A DNA stretch of 63,914 nt, counting the filler, from Octopus bimaculoides (Eukaryota), in the NCBI RefSeq assembly GCF_001194135.2. It is 4 parts of 4 records of this genome, joined end to end, with 100 filler letters (N's around TTAATTAATTAA, not from the genome) between each part and the next. Parts side by side here need not be neighbours in the genome. Positions count along the whole stretch, not along the records: positions 44,100 to 62,744 come from NC_069007.1; 3 more parts are not named here. One strand, written 5' to 3'. The notes beneath the pieces were generated by a model. It searched no databases, was not told where the DNA came from, and saw only the letters and a program-made list of their open reading frames with translations. This document shows positions 44,100 through 62,327 of the stretch, piece after piece. Position 1 is the first letter of the stretch, and each line of letters opens with the position of its first letter. The translations under genes and the position numbers were made by a program.

Positions 44100-44266
44100 A
44101 CTGAAAAAGGATGGCGTCACTATATTTACAATTGGAGTTGTCAATCCAAGAGTGTCTGAGTTAACTGCGGCAGCAAGTGAACCCAGTTGTACACATTTCA
44201 TCAACTTGAAAGATTATAATGAGATTGATTTTATCGTGAGGGAAATTAAATCTAAATCCTGTAGAG
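44100..44266 (+). CDS. Gene 1 exon: C-terminal part of a von Willebrand factor A (VWA) domain; 5' end lost in assembly spacer
   Basis: Frame from 44101 reads LKKDGVTIFTIGVVNPRVSELTAAASEPSCTHFINLKDYNEIDFIVREIKSKSCR, matching the VWA C-terminal pattern (LKxxGVxIFxIGV...EL..IAS.P). Ends at AGA G|GTAAGT, phase 1. Confidence 0.9.
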
Positions 44267-45816
44267 GTAAGTCTGATATCTAACAACTGTTGTTGAAAAT
44301 TATTGTTGTTTTTGTTTCTATTGTTAATGATGTTGTTGCAGATCAATGGATGCTGCTGCACCGAAAGTTTAATAAGATGTAACCATGGACTTTATTACAA
44401 ATTTCCACGATATAATAAGGGCAGTTAATTAATTAATTAATTACTGTGACTGTCTGCAGTCAGCGAACTTAAATTTATTTCTTCCCGCTTACGTACACTG
44501 ATATAACTACTAACTATAAGTACCATACGTTAATTTTTCGGAACACACCGAATAGTTTGATGTGTAAAATGTATGTATATGTGAGTATATATATCCAGGA
44601 CATTGTGCATGTCCTTGTACGTGAGTATAGTTATATAACTGTCGCTATGTATGGCTAGCTGTATGTACAATACGTTCATACAGATGTATGTATAATTATC
44701 TAAGTGGATTGGCGTATGAAGGTATAGCTCATTCCTTTATATTTCCATACATCCGTATTCATATACAGATATGTATACGTATATATATTTGCGCGCGAGT
44801 GTGTGTGTATCTATGTATATATATATATATATATATATATNNNNNNNNNNNNNNNNNNNNNNNNNNNNNNNNNNNNNNNNNNNNNNNNNNNNNNNNNNNN
44901 NNNNNNNNNNNNNNNNNNNNNNNNNNNNNNNNNNNNNNNNNNNNNNNNNNNNNNNNNNNNNNNNNNNNNNNNNNNNNNNNNNNNNNNNNNNNNNNNNNNN
45001 NNNNNNNNNNNNNNNNNNNNNNNNNNNNNNNNNNNNNNNNNNNNNNNNNNNNNNNNNNNNNNNNNNNNNNNNNNNNNNNNNNNNNNNNNNNNNNNNNNNN
45101 NNNNNNNNNNNNNNNNNNNNNNNNNNNNNNNNNNNNNNNNNNNNNNNNNNNNNNNNNNNNNNNNNNNNNNNNNNNNNNNNNNNNNNNNNNNNNNNNNNNN
45201 NNNNNNNNNNNNNNNNNNNNNNNNNNNNNNNNNNNNNNNNNNNNNNNNNNNNNNNNNNNNNNNNNNNNNNNNNNNNNNNNNNNNNNNNNNNNNNNNNNNN
45301 NNNNNNNNNNNNNNNNNNNNNNNNNNNNNNNNNNNNNNNNNNNNNNNNNNNNNNNNNNNNNNNNNNNNNNNNNNNNNNNNNNNNNNNNNNNNNNNNNNNN
45401 NNNNNNNNNNNNNNNNNNNNNNNNNNNNNNNNNNNNNNNNNNNNNNNNNNNNNNNNNNNNNNNNNNNNNNNNNNNNNNNNNNNNNNNNNNNNNNNNNNNN
45501 NNNNNNNNNNNNNNNNNNNNNNNNNNNNNNNNNNNNNNNNNNNNNNNNNNNNNNNNNNNNNNNNNNNNNNNNNNNNNNNNNNNNNNNNNNNNNNNNNNNN
45601 NNNNNNNNNNNNNNNNNNNNNNNNNNNNNNNNNNNNNNNNNNNNNNNNNNNNNNNNNNNNNNNNNNNNNNNNNNNNNNNNNNNNNNNNNNNNNNNNNNNN
45701 NNNNNNNNNNNNNNNNNNNNNNNGGATGTATACACATGAATGTATACTATGTATGCATGTTACATTATATTTGACTGCTATGTTGTGCCTTCCTAAACGT
45801 CACTGTCTGTTTCCAG

Positions 45817-45941
45817 CTCCCACCGAAGTTCCTGAAGACACTCAGTTAGTCAATAACACCATTCCAAAAACTAACGAGACAAAACAACAAGTCTTGCAGG
45901 TCGCCAACACGACAAAGTCCACCTTGGGTACAACAGTTCTG
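45817..45941 (+). CDS. Gene 1 exon A1 (module 1, part A)
   Basis: ctgtctgtttccag acceptor; (A)PTEVPEDTQLVNNTIPKTNETKQQVLQVANTTKSTLGTTVL; CTG|gtaaga donor. 125 nt, phase 1 to 0, three N-glycosylation sequons, similar to exon 49082-49203. Confidence 0.88.
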
Positions 45942-46426
45942 GTAAGACGAATATTCTAAGAACTATATCAACAGAATTGTATTTTTCTATTTTTAAGGAT
46001 GATTGGGAAAGAAGGGACAGTGCCCATAAACATCTCAGTCCTTCAAGGACTGGACGGTCACATTCTTTTTATTGATGTTTAGTTGGGACATTTATGGCTG
46101 CAAGATAAATGTGGGCAACGGAGGGAATTCTGGAGATTGGGTCGACATTGGGTGGGGAGAAAGGATTGAGTATAGTGGTTAGTACAGGAAAAGCGGGGTT
46201 TAGACATAGAATATGTGATTAGGAGGGCAGAGATGGGTGTGTCAAGCTTGCTTTGAAGGGGCTGGTATGCAGATAGCTAGTTCTGAGAAGACGATGTTGT
46301 AGTAACGGTAGAAGCGGCAACAGGAAGAGACAGTGGGTTTATGGGAAAAAGTTTGGACTCCTTTTCTAAATGAATCAATCAAATTAAGGATACTATATAT
46401 ATCATACCCTTTTTGTTTTTCCCCAT

Positions 46427-46634
46427 GTGAGTATCTAGTTTGGTGTGGTGACTATGTATGTTATATCTGTTGTTTTCTGCAGGTGAATGTGCGGTTTGGT
46501 GTGGTCATTCTATATGTTATATCTGTTGTTGTTTTCTTCATGTGAATGTGCGGTTTGGTGTGGTCATTTTATATGTTATATCTGTTGTTGTTTTCTGCAG
46601 GTAAATGTCCAGTGTGGTGTGGTCATTGTGTACG
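46427..46634 (+). repeat. Tandem 56-59 bp units spanning the intron/exon B1 boundary (duplicated 3' splice site)
   Basis: Units start at 46427, 46483, 46542 and the true exon at 46601. Each unit is about 27-34 nt resembling the exon start plus tatgttatatctgttg...ttttctgcag. AG is intact at 46481-82 and 46599-600 and mutated to CAT at 46539-41. Confidence 0.9.
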
Positions 46635-46835
46635 CTTCATTTAGCAACAGTTATCCCAATGAAGCCGACTACGACTACAAGACTTTGGCAACTGACCATC
46701 AGCCGGGCAAATTATTTCTTTTGCCAAAATCAGAACTTGAAAAGCTTGTCCTGACTGTCCTTTCCCAAAAACGATTCGATCTTAATTCCTCAGCCTGTGA
46801 CAATCCTTCCTATGACATCAGCATCAACCCAACGG
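46601..46835 (+). CDS. Gene 1 exon B1 (module 1, part B)
   Basis: gttgttttctgcag acceptor; VNVQCGVVIVYASFSNSYPNEADYDYKTLATDHQPGKLFLLPKSELEKLVLTVLSQKRFDLNSSACDNPSYDISINPT; G|gtaagc donor. 235 nt, phase 0 to 1, homologous to minus-strand exon 60281-60512. Confidence 0.9.
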
Positions 46836-47429
46836 GTAAGCTACTTCGTTTTCTTTCAAACATTGTTTTATATATTTTACATATTCAATGTAAGAGTAAT
46901 GAGGGTTCCAGAATTGACGGCAACATAGNNNNNNNNNNNNNNNNNNNNNNNNNNNNNNNNNNNNNNNNNNNNNNNNNNNNNNNNNNNNNNNNNNNNNNNN
47001 NNNNNNNNNNNNNNNNNNNNNNNNNNNNNNNNNNNNNNNNNNNNNNNNNNNNNNNNNNNNNNNNNNNNNNNNNNNNNNNNNNNNNNNNNNNNNNNNNNNN
47101 NNNNNNNNNNNNNNNNNNNNNNNNNNNNNNNNNNNNNNNNNNNNNNNNNNNNNNNNNNNNNNNNCTTTGGCGTCCCCTCAGAGAGCCCAACGGAACTGTT
47201 TCTGTCTGTCGTTTCCGGCATTCCCCTTGTTTGGTTTTGCCCCTCACTCCCTTCCATCCATGACTTACCAACTCGTCCAACCATACAACTGGTCCACAGG
47301 TGACACTGTTCTTCATTTCTTCCTTGACATTTATATATATATATCTGATTATATCCATCATGAGATGTTTTTACTACCAATAAAAGGTCTGTCTCTTCCT
47401 GTTCTAACATTTGTCTTTCTCTCTCACAG

Positions 47430-47513
47430 CACCCAGACTTGAAGCGGCTTGCATCGTAAATCATGTCCATAGCCCATGTACTGCAAAGCAACTCGACTCT
47501 GCATGTTACGACA
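47430..47513 (+). CDS. Gene 1 exon C1 (module 1, Cys-rich part C)
   Basis: tctttctctctcacag acceptor; (A)PRLEAACIVNHVHSPCTAKQLDSACYD; A|gtaagt donor. 84 nt, phase 1 to 1, three Cys spaced as in the other three 84-nt exons. Confidence 0.88.
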
Positions 47514-61104: not shown

Positions 61105-61223
61105 CATAATTGTACTTCCTGACGAATCTGTACTATTACCGATTTCCAAAATTCGTTCCCGTATTCCGTCATTCTCAACACAGTTATCAAACAATTTACT
61201 GATTTCCTGAGTAACAGGCATCG
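61105..61223 (-). CDS. Gene 2 exon A2'
   Basis: Minus strand: attacgattgcag acceptor; (P)MPVTQEISKLFDNCVENDGIRERILEIGNSTDSSGSTIM; ATG|gtaaga donor. 119 nt, phase 1 to 0. Confidence 0.88.
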
Positions 61224-61486
61224 CTGCAATCGTAATAGATCGTTTATAATGATTGTACAAATGACACACAGACATAAATACATACATATATACGATAGGG
61301 TGTTGAAAAGTTGTAGACAAAGCCATGAAGGATAGGAAGACGGGGACACTTAAAATATCTGCTGGTGTATGTTTTGCTCTAGTCATACGTATAGTTAACC
61401 AGGTGGTACACGAAGGAGTCATAGCCAATGAGTAGTGTAGCAGCACCATATTCAACTGCTACAACGGTAAAGGTGACGCCTTAGAT

Positions 61487-61769
61487 CAAGGGTTTTCAAA
61501 CTGTGGTCCGCGGACCACAGGGGGTCCGCAAGGACAAGACAGGGGGTCCGTAGACAGCAAATACTTTTTATGGCCAATTTGATTTTATATGTTTTTTCAT
61601 GGAAATCTTTTAATTGACAATAAACCTATTTGTTAAATACTGTTAAATAAATAAATGTAACAATATATGCTATTTAAAGCAAATATTTATGTATAAATTT
61701 TATAAGCGTTTATAAGGTAAAGCCTGAGATATAAAGGAGTCCGCAAGTCAAAAAGTTTGAAAACCCCTG
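61487..61769. mobile_element. hAT/Charlie-type MITE with perfect 8-bp target-site duplication
   Basis: TIRs CAAGGGTTTTCAAACT / AGTTTGAAAACCCCTG; TSD CCTTAGAT at 61479-61486 and 61770-61777. Confidence 0.93.
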
Positions 61770-61829
61770 CCTTAGATAGAAAAAAATTACAACTTTATAC
61801 ATAATAATGTTTCGTCTTTCACGTAACCC

Positions 61830-62054
61830 TGAAAGTGATCACAACGAATTCAGGCACAACAGAAACAGGAAGAAAGAGTGAGAGAAAGATGTGGTGAAAG
61901 AGTACAGCAGAGTTCGCCACCATCCCCTGCCGGAGCCTCGTGGAGCTTTAGGTGATTTCGCTCAATAAACACTCACAACGCCCGGTCTGGGTATCGAAAG
62001 CGCAATCCTATGACTGCGAGTCCGCTGCCCTAACCACTGGGCCATTGCGCCTCC
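61830..62054 (-). mobile_element. SINE 5' half (family of 54186-54562)
   Basis: Reverse complement ggaggcgcaatggcccagtggttagggcagcggactcgc... aligns with 54186-54400. Confidence 0.9.
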
Positions 62055-62243
62055 ACGTGAAAGTAATAAATAATAAAGTAAGATTTTTTCTTTTTGTGTT
62101 TTAATATTATGCTTTGTAGTAATTATTCTTTTTTCTTTGGTGGATAATTTAATGGTGTTTTATCTGTTTTTGGATTACGTCTATCCGTGACAATACCGAA
62201 GGAGAACGTGATGTTTGGAGGCTAAAAACTTGTAAGTACTTAC

Positions 62244-62327
62244 GGTCGAAGCATGTAGCGTCGAGTTTCTTTGCAGAACATCGGCTGCGGATATGTTTCA
62301 CAAGGCAACCCAGTTTAGTTTTGGATG
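62244..62327 (-). CDS. Gene 2 exon C1' (most 5' exon visible)
   Basis: Minus strand: gtcttcctctcttacag acceptor; SKTKLGCLVKHIRSRCSAKKLDATCFD; C|gtaagt donor. 84 nt; exon and both flanking introns align to 47430-47513. Confidence 0.88.

What the first reader, a model, noticed from the sequence alone, without database searches (positions are those of the whole stretch)
44100..62327. Hidden tail-to-tail pair of paralogous genes for VWA + twin novel module + GPI-tail surface proteins
Seen: seven exons on + (44100-51465) and five on - (62327-57309), all GT-AG, all visible junctions phase-compatible, with exon-for-exon homology (C1/C1', A2/A2', C2/C2', tail/tail'). The ORF track shows only scattered fragments. 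Established: the first exon has VWA C-terminal features, and a C-terminal hydrophobic stretch after small residues with no cytosolic tail is the GPI-signal pattern. Inference: a locally duplicated family of glycosylated, GPI-anchored adhesion or recognition proteins carrying a module I cannot assign to a named domain.
Basis: partly seen in the sequence, partly recalled or inferred. Interest (0 to 1): 0.85.

Follow-up and report, generated by a model that had tools for sequence, protein, structure and literature searches.

The report
Octopus VWA surface-protein gene pair
Two real but apparently unannotated octopus genes lie tail to tail; they encode secreted VWA-domain proteins with an unnamed beta-sandwich domain found across molluscs, here doubled and ending in a probable GPI membrane anchor instead of the family's usual chitin-binding domains.

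Summary
RNA-seq confirms every visible splice junction. The + gene has seven assembled exons, all GT-AG and in frame, and is very highly expressed. An eighth exon, A2, exists in the mRNA but lies in the assembly gap 49589-50332. It is spliced, expressed less and depending on the sample, and continues upstream beyond the piece through a C-type exon.

The other gaps fall in introns or intergenic DNA and do not break the frame. The two genes are arms of an inverted duplication that includes the 3' flanks.

Exon 1 is the C-terminus of a VWA domain. The B+A+C exons form one module of about 148 aa. AlphaFold predicts it confidently as a jelly-roll beta-sandwich (pLDDT 90.5). It has no Pfam family, no PDB sequence relative and no confident fold match.

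The module is not octopus-only. It follows the VWA domain in an uncharacterised family of about 730 aa found in gastropods, bivalves, a chiton and cephalopods, which ends in chitin-binding CBM14 domains. The octopod subfamily lost CBM14, doubled the module and gained a hydrophobic C-terminus.

GPI anchoring and an adhesion role are plausible but untested. Overall this is a new variant of a known kind, of moderate interest.

The parts
44100..44266 (+). + gene exon E1, cut by the piece edge (reading frame starts at 44101). It encodes the C-terminal part of a VWA domain (...GVTIFTIGVVNPRVSELTAAASEPSCTHFINLKDYNEIDFIVREIKSKSCR). Donor GT at 44267.
   Evidence: Pfam VWA positions 127-171/174, E=3.3e-5. 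RNA contigs join its 3' end to B1 (loose end at 45815). Sequence read.
45817..45941 (+). + gene exon B1 (125 nt). It supplies the N-terminal strands of module 1 and carries three N-x-S/T sequons.
   Evidence: RNA joint 45940->46600, GT..AG, about 590 reads in X24. Frame, sequons. B residues are modelled as strands at high pLDDT.
46601..46835 (+). + gene exon A1 (235 nt), the core of module 1 (VNVQCGVVIVYASFSNSYPNEADYDYK...CDNPSYDISINPT).
   Evidence: RNA joints on both sides. Three heterozygous nonsynonymous SNPs.
47430..47513 (+). + gene exon C1 (84 nt), a three-Cys hairpin plus helix that closes module 1.
   Evidence: RNA joint 46834->47429. The loose end after 47513 equals the start of B2.
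49082..49203 (+). + gene exon B2 (122 nt), the start of module 2.
   Evidence: RNA depth and reciprocal loose ends. Donor GT at 49204.
49589..50332 (+). Assembly gap that must hold the missing + gene exon A2, the core of module 2. The exon is present in mRNA and absent from the assembled letters.
   Evidence: RNA loose ends after B2 (VSTQCAEVTV) and before C2 (PYYTVIIEPK), with 237 nt of one RNA contig (X25) left unaligned upstream of C2. Neither end sequence is in the window. Phase arithmetic.
50967..51050 (+). + gene exon C2 (84 nt): STREVVCHRKQDERPCTPAESESKCSE.
   Evidence: RNA joint 51050->51359, GT..AG, 681 reads in X24 and contigs in three runs.
51359..51465 (+). + gene last coding exon up to the stop codon. 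It encodes a Thr-rich stalk and a hydrophobic C-terminus (TPTTLMPTTTDDAVTNQLSITASISAGLLLAWRLA*). The 3' UTR continues beyond.
   Evidence: RNA, translation, hydropathy.
62244..62327 (-). - gene exon C1'. Its acceptor at 62327 is used by reads that join it to an upstream C2-type exon lying outside the piece.
   Evidence: Joint 61223->62244, CT..AC on the + strand. Spliced loose ends at 62327 in X24 and X42. X37 contig at depth 483 covers exactly 62244-62327 (it runs 3 nt past 62327, too short to be listed as a loose end). X20 shows unspliced read-through to 62562.
61105..61223 (-). - gene exon B2' (119 nt).
   Evidence: RNA joints on both sides. Frame.
60281..60512 (-). - gene exon A2' (232 nt), the module core.
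   Evidence: RNA joint 60510->61103. Its 3' end is found as a loose end at C2'.
59107..59190 (-). - gene exon C2' (84 nt).
   Evidence: X20 contigs join it to A2' and to tail'.
57309..57400 (-). - gene last coding exon with stop: DPRDEPSAGYRQLSINAWISAGLLAAWRLA*.
   Evidence: Loose end at 59107 equals its first bases. Translation. The tail is conserved in the O. sinensis ortholog P0124.
52496..52814 (.). 3' flank of the + gene that is duplicated in inverted orientation at 55592-55274. It shows that the duplication covered more than coding DNA.
   Evidence: blastn, 72.7% identity over 333 bases.
55274..55592 (.). Inverted partner of 52496-52814, in the 3' flank of the - gene.

Best explanation
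The piece holds the 3' parts of two convergently transcribed paralogues from an octopod-specific subfamily of secreted VWA-domain glycoproteins.

Shown:
- Both genes are transcribed and spliced exactly at the listed GT-AG junctions.
- The + gene is one of the abundant mRNAs in several RNA samples. The - gene is roughly 100 times lower in two samples and substantial in another.
- The two genes arose by an inverted segmental duplication.
- Each product carries, after the VWA domain, modules of about 148 aa encoded by three exons (B, A, C). The module is predicted with high confidence to fold as one jelly-roll-like beta-sandwich with a small disulfide-rich hairpin and helix.
- The same module sits between the VWA domain and 2-4 chitin-binding CBM14 domains in an uncharacterised family of about 730 aa found in gastropods, bivalves, a chiton and cephalopods.

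Inferred:
- In octopods the CBM14 domains were lost, the module was duplicated, and a short stalk plus a C-terminal hydrophobic peptide was added. That peptide is preceded by small residues and has no cytoplasmic tail.
- Full-length relatives start with a hydrophobic leader that reads as a signal peptide. Together the two features are the pattern of a GPI attachment signal.
- The protein would therefore be tethered to the apical cell surface rather than to chitin. The VWA domain would act as a metal-dependent protein-binding head, and the beta-sandwich modules as spacers or ligand (possibly glycan) binding units.
- The most likely role is cell-surface to extracellular-matrix or cuticle adhesion, or surface recognition.
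- Fast sequence change between copies (dN/dS about 1 with the reading frame preserved) suggests relaxed or diversifying selection on the exposed parts.
For: Gene models and expression:
- Spliced reads and contigs at every junction.
- About 1000x depth from 6% of run X24 and contig depth about 4000 in X20 for the + gene. Depth 27-35 in X20 and 483 in X37 for the - gene.
- Open frames.

Duplication: inverted DNA similarity including the 3' flank.

Domains:
- VWA. Full VWA in relatives at 135-155 bits.
- Module fold: AlphaFold2 pLDDT 81 with 10 sequences and 90.5 (pTM 0.77) with 18.
- No Pfam family and no PDB sequence relative.

Family:
- The profile search found 25 hits, limited to Octopus, Argonauta, Sepia, Littorina and Tegillarca.
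- The broader profile finds the module at about residues 360-520 in almost every member of the mollusc-wide VWA-CBM14 family.

Anchor pattern:
- Hydrophobic ends are conserved in O. sinensis, O. vulgaris and O. bimaculoides. Argonauta has them with a different sequence.
- A 'PSAG' motif lies upstream of the - gene tail and is conserved in its O. sinensis ortholog.
- Full-length O. vulgaris, O. sinensis and O. bimaculoides relatives start with a hydrophobic leader, MTIGYLLFVVICLGIARHVYA or similar.

Evolution:
- dN/dS is 1.1 over 125 codons.
- The - copy ORF survives in only 3% of simulations at 13.5% random substitution and 0.15% at 27%.
- Exon length differences between copies are all multiples of three.
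Against: - No GPI predictor or signal-peptide predictor could be run. The hydrophobic tail of the Octopus copies is only moderately hydrophobic (mean Kyte-Doolittle 1.2-1.6 over 18 residues) and contains an Arg or Gln near the end.
- The 5' parts of both genes, including the signal peptide and most of the VWA domain with its metal site, lie outside the piece.
- Tissue of expression is unknown because run labels are coded.
- No ligand is known for the module. Foldseek finds only weak jelly-roll matches (best E 3e-3, TM at most 0.5).
- dN/dS near 1 is also what a decaying copy would show.
- The - product has one N-glycosylation sequon against six in the visible part of the + product.
Confidence: 0.6

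Rival explanations
1. The proteins are secreted matrix components with no lipid anchor. The C-terminal hydrophobic peptide would be a single-pass membrane anchor, a cleaved propeptide or a hydrophobic interaction motif. The proteins would work like their CBM14-bearing relatives, as soluble cross-linkers of a chitinous matrix (sucker lining, beak, radula, stylet, gut cuticle), with the beta-sandwich module itself binding polysaccharide.
For: The ancestral family is a VWA plus chitin-binding architecture typical of secreted matrix proteins. The weak fold matches include carbohydrate-binding modules CBM6, a porphyran-binding CBM and a PA14-like insert. The tail is only moderately hydrophobic. Expression is very high, as for structural matrix proteins.
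Against: The Octopus subfamily has lost every CBM14 domain. The hydrophobic end, with small residues upstream and nothing after it, recurs in Argonauta with an unrelated sequence, which argues for a signal defined by physical properties, such as a GPI signal. No fold match is significant.
Confidence: 0.22
2. The - strand gene is a decaying partial duplicate, a transcribed pseudogene. Only the + gene would be functional.
For: dN/dS is about 1 between copies. Expression is about 100-fold lower in X20 and X24. An unspliced read-through transcript runs upstream of C1' in X20. The O. sinensis ortholog is modelled as a 200 aa protein starting inside the C1 exon, without a leader. It has only one N-glycosylation sequon.
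Against: The frame is open over 202 codons, which is rare under neutral change (3% or 0.15% of simulations). Only in-frame length differences separate the copies. All junctions are correctly spliced. The C1' acceptor is spliced to an upstream coding-looking exon in X24 and X42, and X37 covers C1' at depth 483. The O. sinensis ortholog retains the cysteines and the tail.
Confidence: 0.12
3. The subfamily is a fast-evolving recognition or immune-type receptor set. The beta-sandwich modules would act as variable ligand-binding (lectin-like) units displayed on the cell surface, diversified by tandem and inverted duplication.
For: There are many paralogues in clusters in O. vulgaris, O. sinensis and O. 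bimaculoides, with varying module number. dN/dS is about 1 with the ORF kept. All three polymorphisms seen in exon A1 are nonsynonymous. Orthologs are only 70-84% identical between Octopus species.
Against: There is no evidence of ligand binding or of immune-related expression. The sample for dN/dS is small. The very high steady expression in many runs looks more structural than receptor-like. Some of the apparent polymorphism could come from reads of a near-identical paralogue.
Confidence: 0.15

Closest known systems
Molluscan VWA plus chitin-binding domain proteins (VWA-CB dcps; Pif/BMSP family of shell-matrix proteins, PMC11291548)
   Same: Both are secreted lophotrochozoan proteins with an N-terminal region, a VWA domain and, in the wider family to which these genes belong, several CBM14 peritrophin-A domains. 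The PifS1 subfamily is described as having a long insertion between signal peptide and VWA (PMC11291548). The wider family here likewise has about 150 aa before the VWA domain.
   Different: The two window genes and their Octopus relatives have no CBM14, no laminin-G or acidic Pif80-like part, a doubled unnamed module and a hydrophobic C-terminus. No relative found carries the name Pif or BMSP. Whether their VWA domain falls in the Pif/BMSP clade could not be tested.
Uncharacterised Octopus proteins LOC115230178 (O. sinensis, P0008), CAI9741715 (O. vulgaris, P0030) and LOC115229615 (O. sinensis, P0124)
   Same: P0008 and P0030 have the same architecture as the + gene: leader (in P0030), N-domain, VWA, two B-A-C modules and a hydrophobic tail. 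P0124 is the likely ortholog of the - gene, at 70% identity over 98% of it.
   Different: They come from other species, are named only 'uncharacterized' or 'hypothetical', and have no publication. Neither window gene has a protein at least 90% identical in the collection.
Jelly-roll ligand-binding domains: C-terminal claudin-binding domain of Clostridium perfringens enterotoxin, CBM6, PA14-like inserts, Kex2 P-domain
   Same: They share the overall all-beta sandwich of roughly 110-150 residues and are the top Foldseek matches.
   Different: E-values are 3e-3 or worse, TM-scores 0.3-0.5 and identity 9-16%. The Pfam PPC family is matched by one of 18 module sequences at E=0.15 only. This is a resemblance in fold class, not demonstrated homology.
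GPI-anchored VWA or adhesion glycoproteins in general
   Same: N-terminal leader in relatives, extracellular adhesion-type domains, a Thr-rich stalk in the + gene, and a C-terminal hydrophobic peptive preceded by small residues with no cytoplasmic tail.
   Different: The anchor is predicted by eye only. No predictor or experiment was available.

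Membership tests
VWA domain (Pfam PF00092) | Match to the family profile above the curated cut-off | tested here: met
   Exon 1 alone scores 24.6 bits against a cut-off of 23.8, over profile positions 127-171 of 174. Within the 244 aa spliced product it scores 21.6 bits, just below the cut-off because only the last third of the domain is in the piece. Relatives carry the full domain at 135-155 bits.
VWA domain (Pfam PF00092) | Metal-ion-dependent adhesion site (DxSxS ... 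T ... D) | not testable with these tools
   That part of the domain lies upstream of the piece. By reading, relatives P0008 and P0030 show ...VIDSSGSV......GGGTAT.../...GRTAT... and ...LVTDG....
Pif/BMSP-type VWA plus chitin-binding proteins | Chitin-binding CBM14 (peritrophin-A) domain(s) after the VWA domain | tested here: not met
   There is no CBM14 in either window product (the C-termini are read). CBM14 is present in the wider family: P0006, P0017, P0018, P0022, P0024, P0029 and most hits.
Pif/BMSP-type VWA plus chitin-binding proteins | VWA domain placed inside the Pif/BMSP clade by phylogeny (PMC11291548) | not testable with these tools
   The paper's octopus identifiers (Ocbimv22...) could not be mapped to the proteins found here, and no Pif or BMSP sequences were on hand.
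Pif/BMSP-type VWA plus chitin-binding proteins | C-terminal laminin-G-like or acidic mineral-binding part | tested here: not met
   Pfam reports nothing beyond VWA in the + product through exon B2 and in exon C2, or in the full-length relative P0008. The products end in a short stalk and a hydrophobic peptide.
GPI-anchored proteins | C-terminal hydrophobic stretch ending the protein, with no cytoplasmic tail | tested here: met
   The last 18 residues have mean hydropathy 1.2-1.9 in all family tails. The proteins end there.
GPI-anchored proteins | Small-residue omega site about 8-12 residues before the hydrophobic stretch, scored by a trained predictor | not tested
   Candidates are seen by eye only: SAG in the - gene and its ortholog, DDA in the + gene, SGA in Argonauta. 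NetGPI, PredGPI and big-PI were not available.
GPI-anchored proteins | N-terminal signal peptide | not testable with these tools
   The 5' ends of both genes lie outside the piece. Relatives P0030, P0009, P0010, P0032 and P0123 begin with M-x-I-x-YLLFV-x-ICLG-x-ARH-x-YA. No predictor was run.
Mollusc-wide N-domain / VWA / module / CBM14 family (unnamed) | The B-A-C module directly after the VWA domain, detectable by profile | tested here: met
   The window module seeds the profile. 25 hits in 1.84 billion representatives. The broadened profile hits about 50 family members at residues about 360-520, E 1e-5 to 1e-35.
PPC / C-CPE / CBM-like jelly-roll domains | Significant profile or fold match | tested here: inconclusive
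   Foldseek best E is 3e-3 and TM at most 0.5. Pfam PPC is matched at E=0.15 by one of 18 sequences. No PDB sequence hit.

The most novel reading that the evidence does not exclude
The B-A-C unit is a genuinely new extracellular domain family: a mollusc-wide beta-sandwich with a conserved disulfide and no detectable relative in Pfam or the PDB. Octopods would have rebuilt a chitin-matrix protein into a highly expressed, fast-evolving, GPI-tethered surface protein family by dropping the chitin-binding domains and doubling this domain. This would give shell-less cephalopods a lineage-specific cell-surface adhesion or recognition system derived from the shell-matrix toolkit.
Probability: 0.3. Interest if true: 0.55.

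Novelty: new variant of a known kind. Interest (0 to 1): 0.4.

Why it matters
The result adds two expressed genes to an octopus genome annotation that appears to miss them, one of them among the abundant transcripts. It also shows that an assembly gap swallows a coding exon.

It defines a conserved domain of about 148 aa that current domain libraries lack. That domain marks a mollusc-wide family of VWA plus chitin-binding matrix proteins which nobody has characterised.

The octopod subfamily shows how a matrix protein can be converted into a probable membrane-tethered one: chitin-binding domains lost, a GPI-like tail gained, and the module duplicated. This bears on what became of the shell-matrix gene toolkit in shell-less cephalopods. 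It also offers a tractable candidate for the link between epithelium and chitinous linings such as those of the suckers, beak and gut.

It is not a new kind of system, and its function is still inferred.

Tried and rejected
For the whole piece the mariner remnant at 48263-48466 is a likely cause, perhaps with microsatellites; in 57200-59316 only microsatellites are candidates. I worked exon by exon instead.
I replaced it with the single-exon translation.
- An octopus-only profile gave just 25 hits and at first suggested a cephalopod-restricted module. Broadening the alignment showed it is mollusc-wide.
- I suspected PPC/collagenase-type or CUB homology from the 'V.V.C..V.VY....P...DYDYK' motif and from weak multi-stretch hits to CUB-repeat proteins (P0016, P0025). 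Neither is supported: Pfam PPC gives E=0.15 once, the per-domain CUB scores are insignificant, and no CUB structure appears among the 50 Foldseek matches listed for either model.
- The N-terminal domain of about 150 aa of the family has no Pfam or PDB sequence match.
- Literature searches for all locus and accession names found nothing.
- Mapping to the Pif/BMSP classification failed for lack of shared identifiers.
- Rfam finds nothing in the piece.
- No AATAAA or ATTAAA signal occurs between either stop codon and the next gap, so the 3' ends are undefined.

Full report
WHAT THE PIECE IS

The finding's piece (44100-62744) is AT-rich eukaryotic DNA with nine N gaps, microsatellites and transposon debris. 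All protein relatives of its coding parts are from Octopus or other molluscs. Public DNA and RNA runs of one species label ('organism A') match it at 99% or more. A 2015 genome and transcriptome project under that label fits Octopus bimaculoides. So do near-identical intron read-through sequences in O. bimaculoides models of a paralogue (P0005/P0123). That species assignment is my inference.

CHECKING THE OBSERVATION

A six-frame self-comparison and blastn show that 46576-52814 on the + strand is mirrored in inverted orientation by 62420-55274, at 67-88% DNA identity. The similarity covers exons, adjoining intron ends and the 3' flank (52496-52814 against 55592-55274). The two genes are therefore arms of an inverted segmental duplication, tail to tail.

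RNA-seq then fixed the exons. For the + gene, raw reads (X24, X41) and assembled RNA contigs (X20, X25, X31) give these joints:
- 45940->46600, 46834->47429 and 51050->51359, all GT..AG, each with hundreds of reads.
- Reciprocal loose ends link E1 to B1, C1 to B2, B2 to an unseen exon, and that unseen exon to C2.

After resolving alignment ambiguity at the AG/GT sites the exons are 44100-44266, 45817-45941, 46601-46835, 47430-47513, 49082-49203, 50967-51050 and 51359-51465. Their concatenation is one open frame.

Depth is about 500+500 reads per position from 6% of run X24, and contig depth is about 4000 in X20. This is a very abundant mRNA.

THE GAPS

Three + strand gaps (44841-45723, 46929-47164, 48764-48965) are inside introns that RNA bridges directly, so nothing coding is lost there.

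The gap 49589-50332 is different. After B2 the mRNA continues GTGAGTACCCAGTGTGCCGAAGTCACTGT (VSTQCAEVTV, the typical start of an A exon). Before C2 it reads ...CCCTACTACACAGTCATCATTGAGCCAAAAG (PYYTVIIEPK, the typical A-exon end). Neither string is in the window, and 237 nt of one RNA contig (X25) lie unaligned upstream of C2.

B2 ends in phase 0 and C2 needs one base from the previous exon. A-type exons are 235 or 232 bases (3n+1), so the phases fit. The + gene thus has eight exons in this interval, seven of them assembled.

THE - GENE

Homology and splice sites give exons 62327-62244, 61223-61105, 60512-60281, 59190-59107 and 57400-57309, with one open frame of 202 codons ending in a stop.

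RNA shows the joints C1'-B2' and B2'-A2' (CT..AC on the + strand). Loose ends of an X20 contig tie C2' to both A2' and tail'. The two - strand gaps are intronic and bridged.

Expression is about 100 times below the + gene in X20 and X24, but a contig covering C1' has depth 483 in X37.

At the C1' acceptor, spliced reads in X24 and X42 lead to an upstream exon ending ...AESKAKCSK. X20 also has an unspliced transcript running to 62562.

WHAT THE PROTEINS ARE

Exon 1 matches the last third of the VWA domain. Nothing else in either product matches Pfam.

Database relatives of the first search were seven Octopus proteins, all 'uncharacterized' or generically named. The best identities were 84% for the + product and 70% for the - product (P0124, O. 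sinensis LOC115229615). No protein at least 90% identical to either product was found, so neither gene appears to be annotated.

A profile of the B-A-C unit searched against 1.84 billion representative proteins found only 25 hits. They come from Octopus species, Argonauta hians, Sepia pharaonis, the gastropod Littorina saxatilis and the bivalve Tegillarca granosa.

Their architectures and a second homology search reveal a mollusc-wide family of about 730 aa. It runs: leader, an unassigned N-domain of about 150 aa, VWA, this module, then 2-4 CBM14 chitin-binding domains. It is present in abalones, limpets, whelks, periwinkles, oysters, scallops, clams, mussels and a chiton, and all members are unnamed.

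A broadened module profile hits about 50 of these proteins at residues about 360-520. So the module is unnamed but conserved across Mollusca.

Full-length Octopus relatives of the + gene (P0008, P0030) read: leader (P0030), N-domain, VWA, B1-A1-C1, B2-A2-C2, short linker, hydrophobic end. This is the architecture the window fragment implies.

THE MODULE

AlphaFold2 on the window's B1-A1-C1 gives pLDDT 81 with ten sequences and 90.5 (pTM 0.77) with eighteen. The model has eleven strands plus a terminal helix.

The 'linker-like' B exon is modelled as strands at pLDDT above 90. B, A and C therefore encode one domain, not a linker plus domain. Two cysteines (VQC... and ...SAC) are nearly invariant.

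Foldseek against the PDB finds no match at E of 1e-3 or better. The best hits are the claudin-binding domain of C. perfringens enterotoxin, phage receptor-binding domains, a PA14-like insert, CBM6, the Kex2 P-domain and picornavirus jelly rolls. Their TM-scores are 0.3-0.5. This indicates a jelly-roll sandwich of the ligand-binding type without a demonstrable relative.

Pfam and PDB sequence profiles are negative.

THE TAIL

Both products end in a hydrophobic peptide with nothing after it...DDAVTNQLSITASISAGLLLAWRLA and ...EPSAGYRQLSINAWISAGLLAAWRLA. The same feature is conserved in O. sinensis, O. vulgaris and O. bimaculoides relatives. In Argonauta it recurs with a different, more hydrophobic sequence after SGA.

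With the leader seen in full-length relatives, this is the classic pattern of a GPI signal. It was judged by eye and hydropathy only. The Octopus tails are moderately hydrophobic and contain an Arg or Gln near the end, so I rate GPI anchoring at about 0.6.

The + product has six N-x-S/T sequons in the visible part and a Thr-rich stalk. The - product has one sequon and no Thr-rich stalk.

EVOLUTION

Between the two copies dN/dS is 0.98 (C1+B2), 1.3 (C2+tail) and 1.1 overall on 125 codons. Even so, the - copy keeps a 202-codon open frame. That happens in only 3% of simulations at 13.5% random substitution, and in 0.15% at 27%.

All exon length differences are multiples of three. The O. sinensis ortholog of the - gene keeps the cysteines and the tail.

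All three heterozygous sites seen in exon A1 are nonsynonymous. This fits relaxed or diversifying selection on a functional surface protein better than decay, but the data are thin.

HOW IT MOST LIKELY WORKS

Shown: two spliced, expressed, paralogous genes for VWA proteins carrying one or more copies of a conserved beta-sandwich module.

Inferred: the products enter the secretory pathway, are N-glycosylated and are GPI-tethered to the apical membrane. The VWA domain would bind a protein partner through its metal site, which is intact by reading in relatives. The modules would act as rigid spacers or glycan or ligand binders.

The ancestral family ends in chitin-binding domains. The simplest story is therefore that a chitin-matrix linker became a membrane-tethered linker or receptor in octopods.

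Rivals are:
- a non-anchored secreted matrix protein;
- a decaying second copy;
- a recognition or immune-type receptor family.

COMPARISON WITH KNOWN FAMILIES

The nearest described group is the lophotrochozoan 'VWA and chitin-binding domain-containing proteins', which include the Pif/BMSP shell-matrix family (PMC11291548). The wider family found here shares VWA plus CBM14, and, like the PifS1 subfamily, a long stretch between leader and VWA.

The window genes lack CBM14 and any laminin-G or acidic part. No relative is named Pif or BMSP, and clade membership could not be tested. I therefore do not file them as Pif/BMSP members.

No paper mentions any of the loci.

VERDICT

The 'novel module' is unnamed yet widespread in molluscs. 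The GPI anchor and the function remain predictions. This is a new variant of a known kind, of moderate interest.

Noticed in passing
window 46438-46627: A 59-bp unit is tandemly repeated 3.3 times (88% matches). It contains the polypyrimidine tract, the AG acceptor and the first 11 or so bases of exon A1. RNA uses only the last copy (acceptor at 46599-46600). 59 is not a multiple of 3, so the upstream copies would shift the frame.
   Followed up: partly
window 48263-48466 (+), intron between C1 and B2: A remnant of a mariner transposase, matching SETMAR/Hsmar1 at E=1e-15 and Mos1 at E=4e-9 in the PDB sequence search; Pfam reported nothing at E of 0.01 or better.
   Followed up: yes
window 61850-62119 (intron C1'->B2') and 54051-54448: A SINE-like repeat shared by the two places (about 85% at translated level). 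It has very high multi-locus RNA depth, many variant letters and poly(A)-like loose ends near 62055. It has no Rfam family.
   Followed up: partly
window 50339-50484 and 54417-54562; 56598-56942 and 59884-60042: Two further repeat pairs: a direct pair at 96.6% DNA identity, and an inverted pair at about 93% identity at translated level. They are presumably young interspersed elements in an intron and in the intergenic region.
   Followed up: no
window 46760, 46790, 46823 (exon A1): Three heterozygous sites at about 55-60% of reads in X24, also present in X25 and absent in X41 and X20. All are nonsynonymous (L>F, S>T, I>F). They are either allelic variation or reads from a near-identical paralogue.
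   Followed up: partly
window 51050 -> 50965: Seven reads in X24 join the end of exon C2 back to its own start ('goes back 86'). This could be a rare circular RNA, a tandem C2-C2 isoform or a paralogue with two C exons in a row. P0004, and the exon upstream of C1' in gene 2, show that C-C arrangements exist in this family.
   Followed up: no
window 62328-62562 (-): In run X20 the transcript of the - gene reads through the C1' acceptor for at least 235 bases upstream without splicing, at the same depth as the exons. X24 and X42 show the spliced form, and X37 covers only the C1' exon. The O. sinensis ortholog (P0124) is modelled as starting inside the C1 exon. This could be an alternative start or intron retention.
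   Followed up: partly
relatives P0030, P0032, P0042, P0017, P0022, P0024 (residues about 20-175): The mollusc-wide family has a conserved N-terminal domain of about 150 aa before the VWA domain (motif ...GGIW[KQR]V...). It has no Pfam or PDB sequence match and may be a second unnamed domain.
   Followed up: partly
P0021 (JGI record, 938-base contig, organism unknown): A 284 aa protein with two cysteine-less copies of the module core (...MFASLTNSRPSATDYDYTASSGQG...), a Thr-rich linker and a hydrophobic C-terminus. It has the same overall design as the octopus proteins but comes from an unidentified organism.
   Followed up: no
P0104 (tardigrade Paramacrobiotus metropolitanus), residues 411-510: A CUB-VWA-ZP protein gives a partial match to the module profile right after its VWA domain (E about 1e-8, profile positions 34-83). 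This hints that the module may be older than molluscs.
   Followed up: no
O. vulgaris 40.2-Mb record; O. bimaculoides 22.6-Mb record: Several family members carry nearby accession numbers on one chromosome-scale record (CAI9741682, 715, 733, 735, 736; LOC106870155 and LOC106870158). These include both the CBM14-bearing and the tail-bearing forms, so the subfamily seems to sit in one gene cluster.
   Followed up: no
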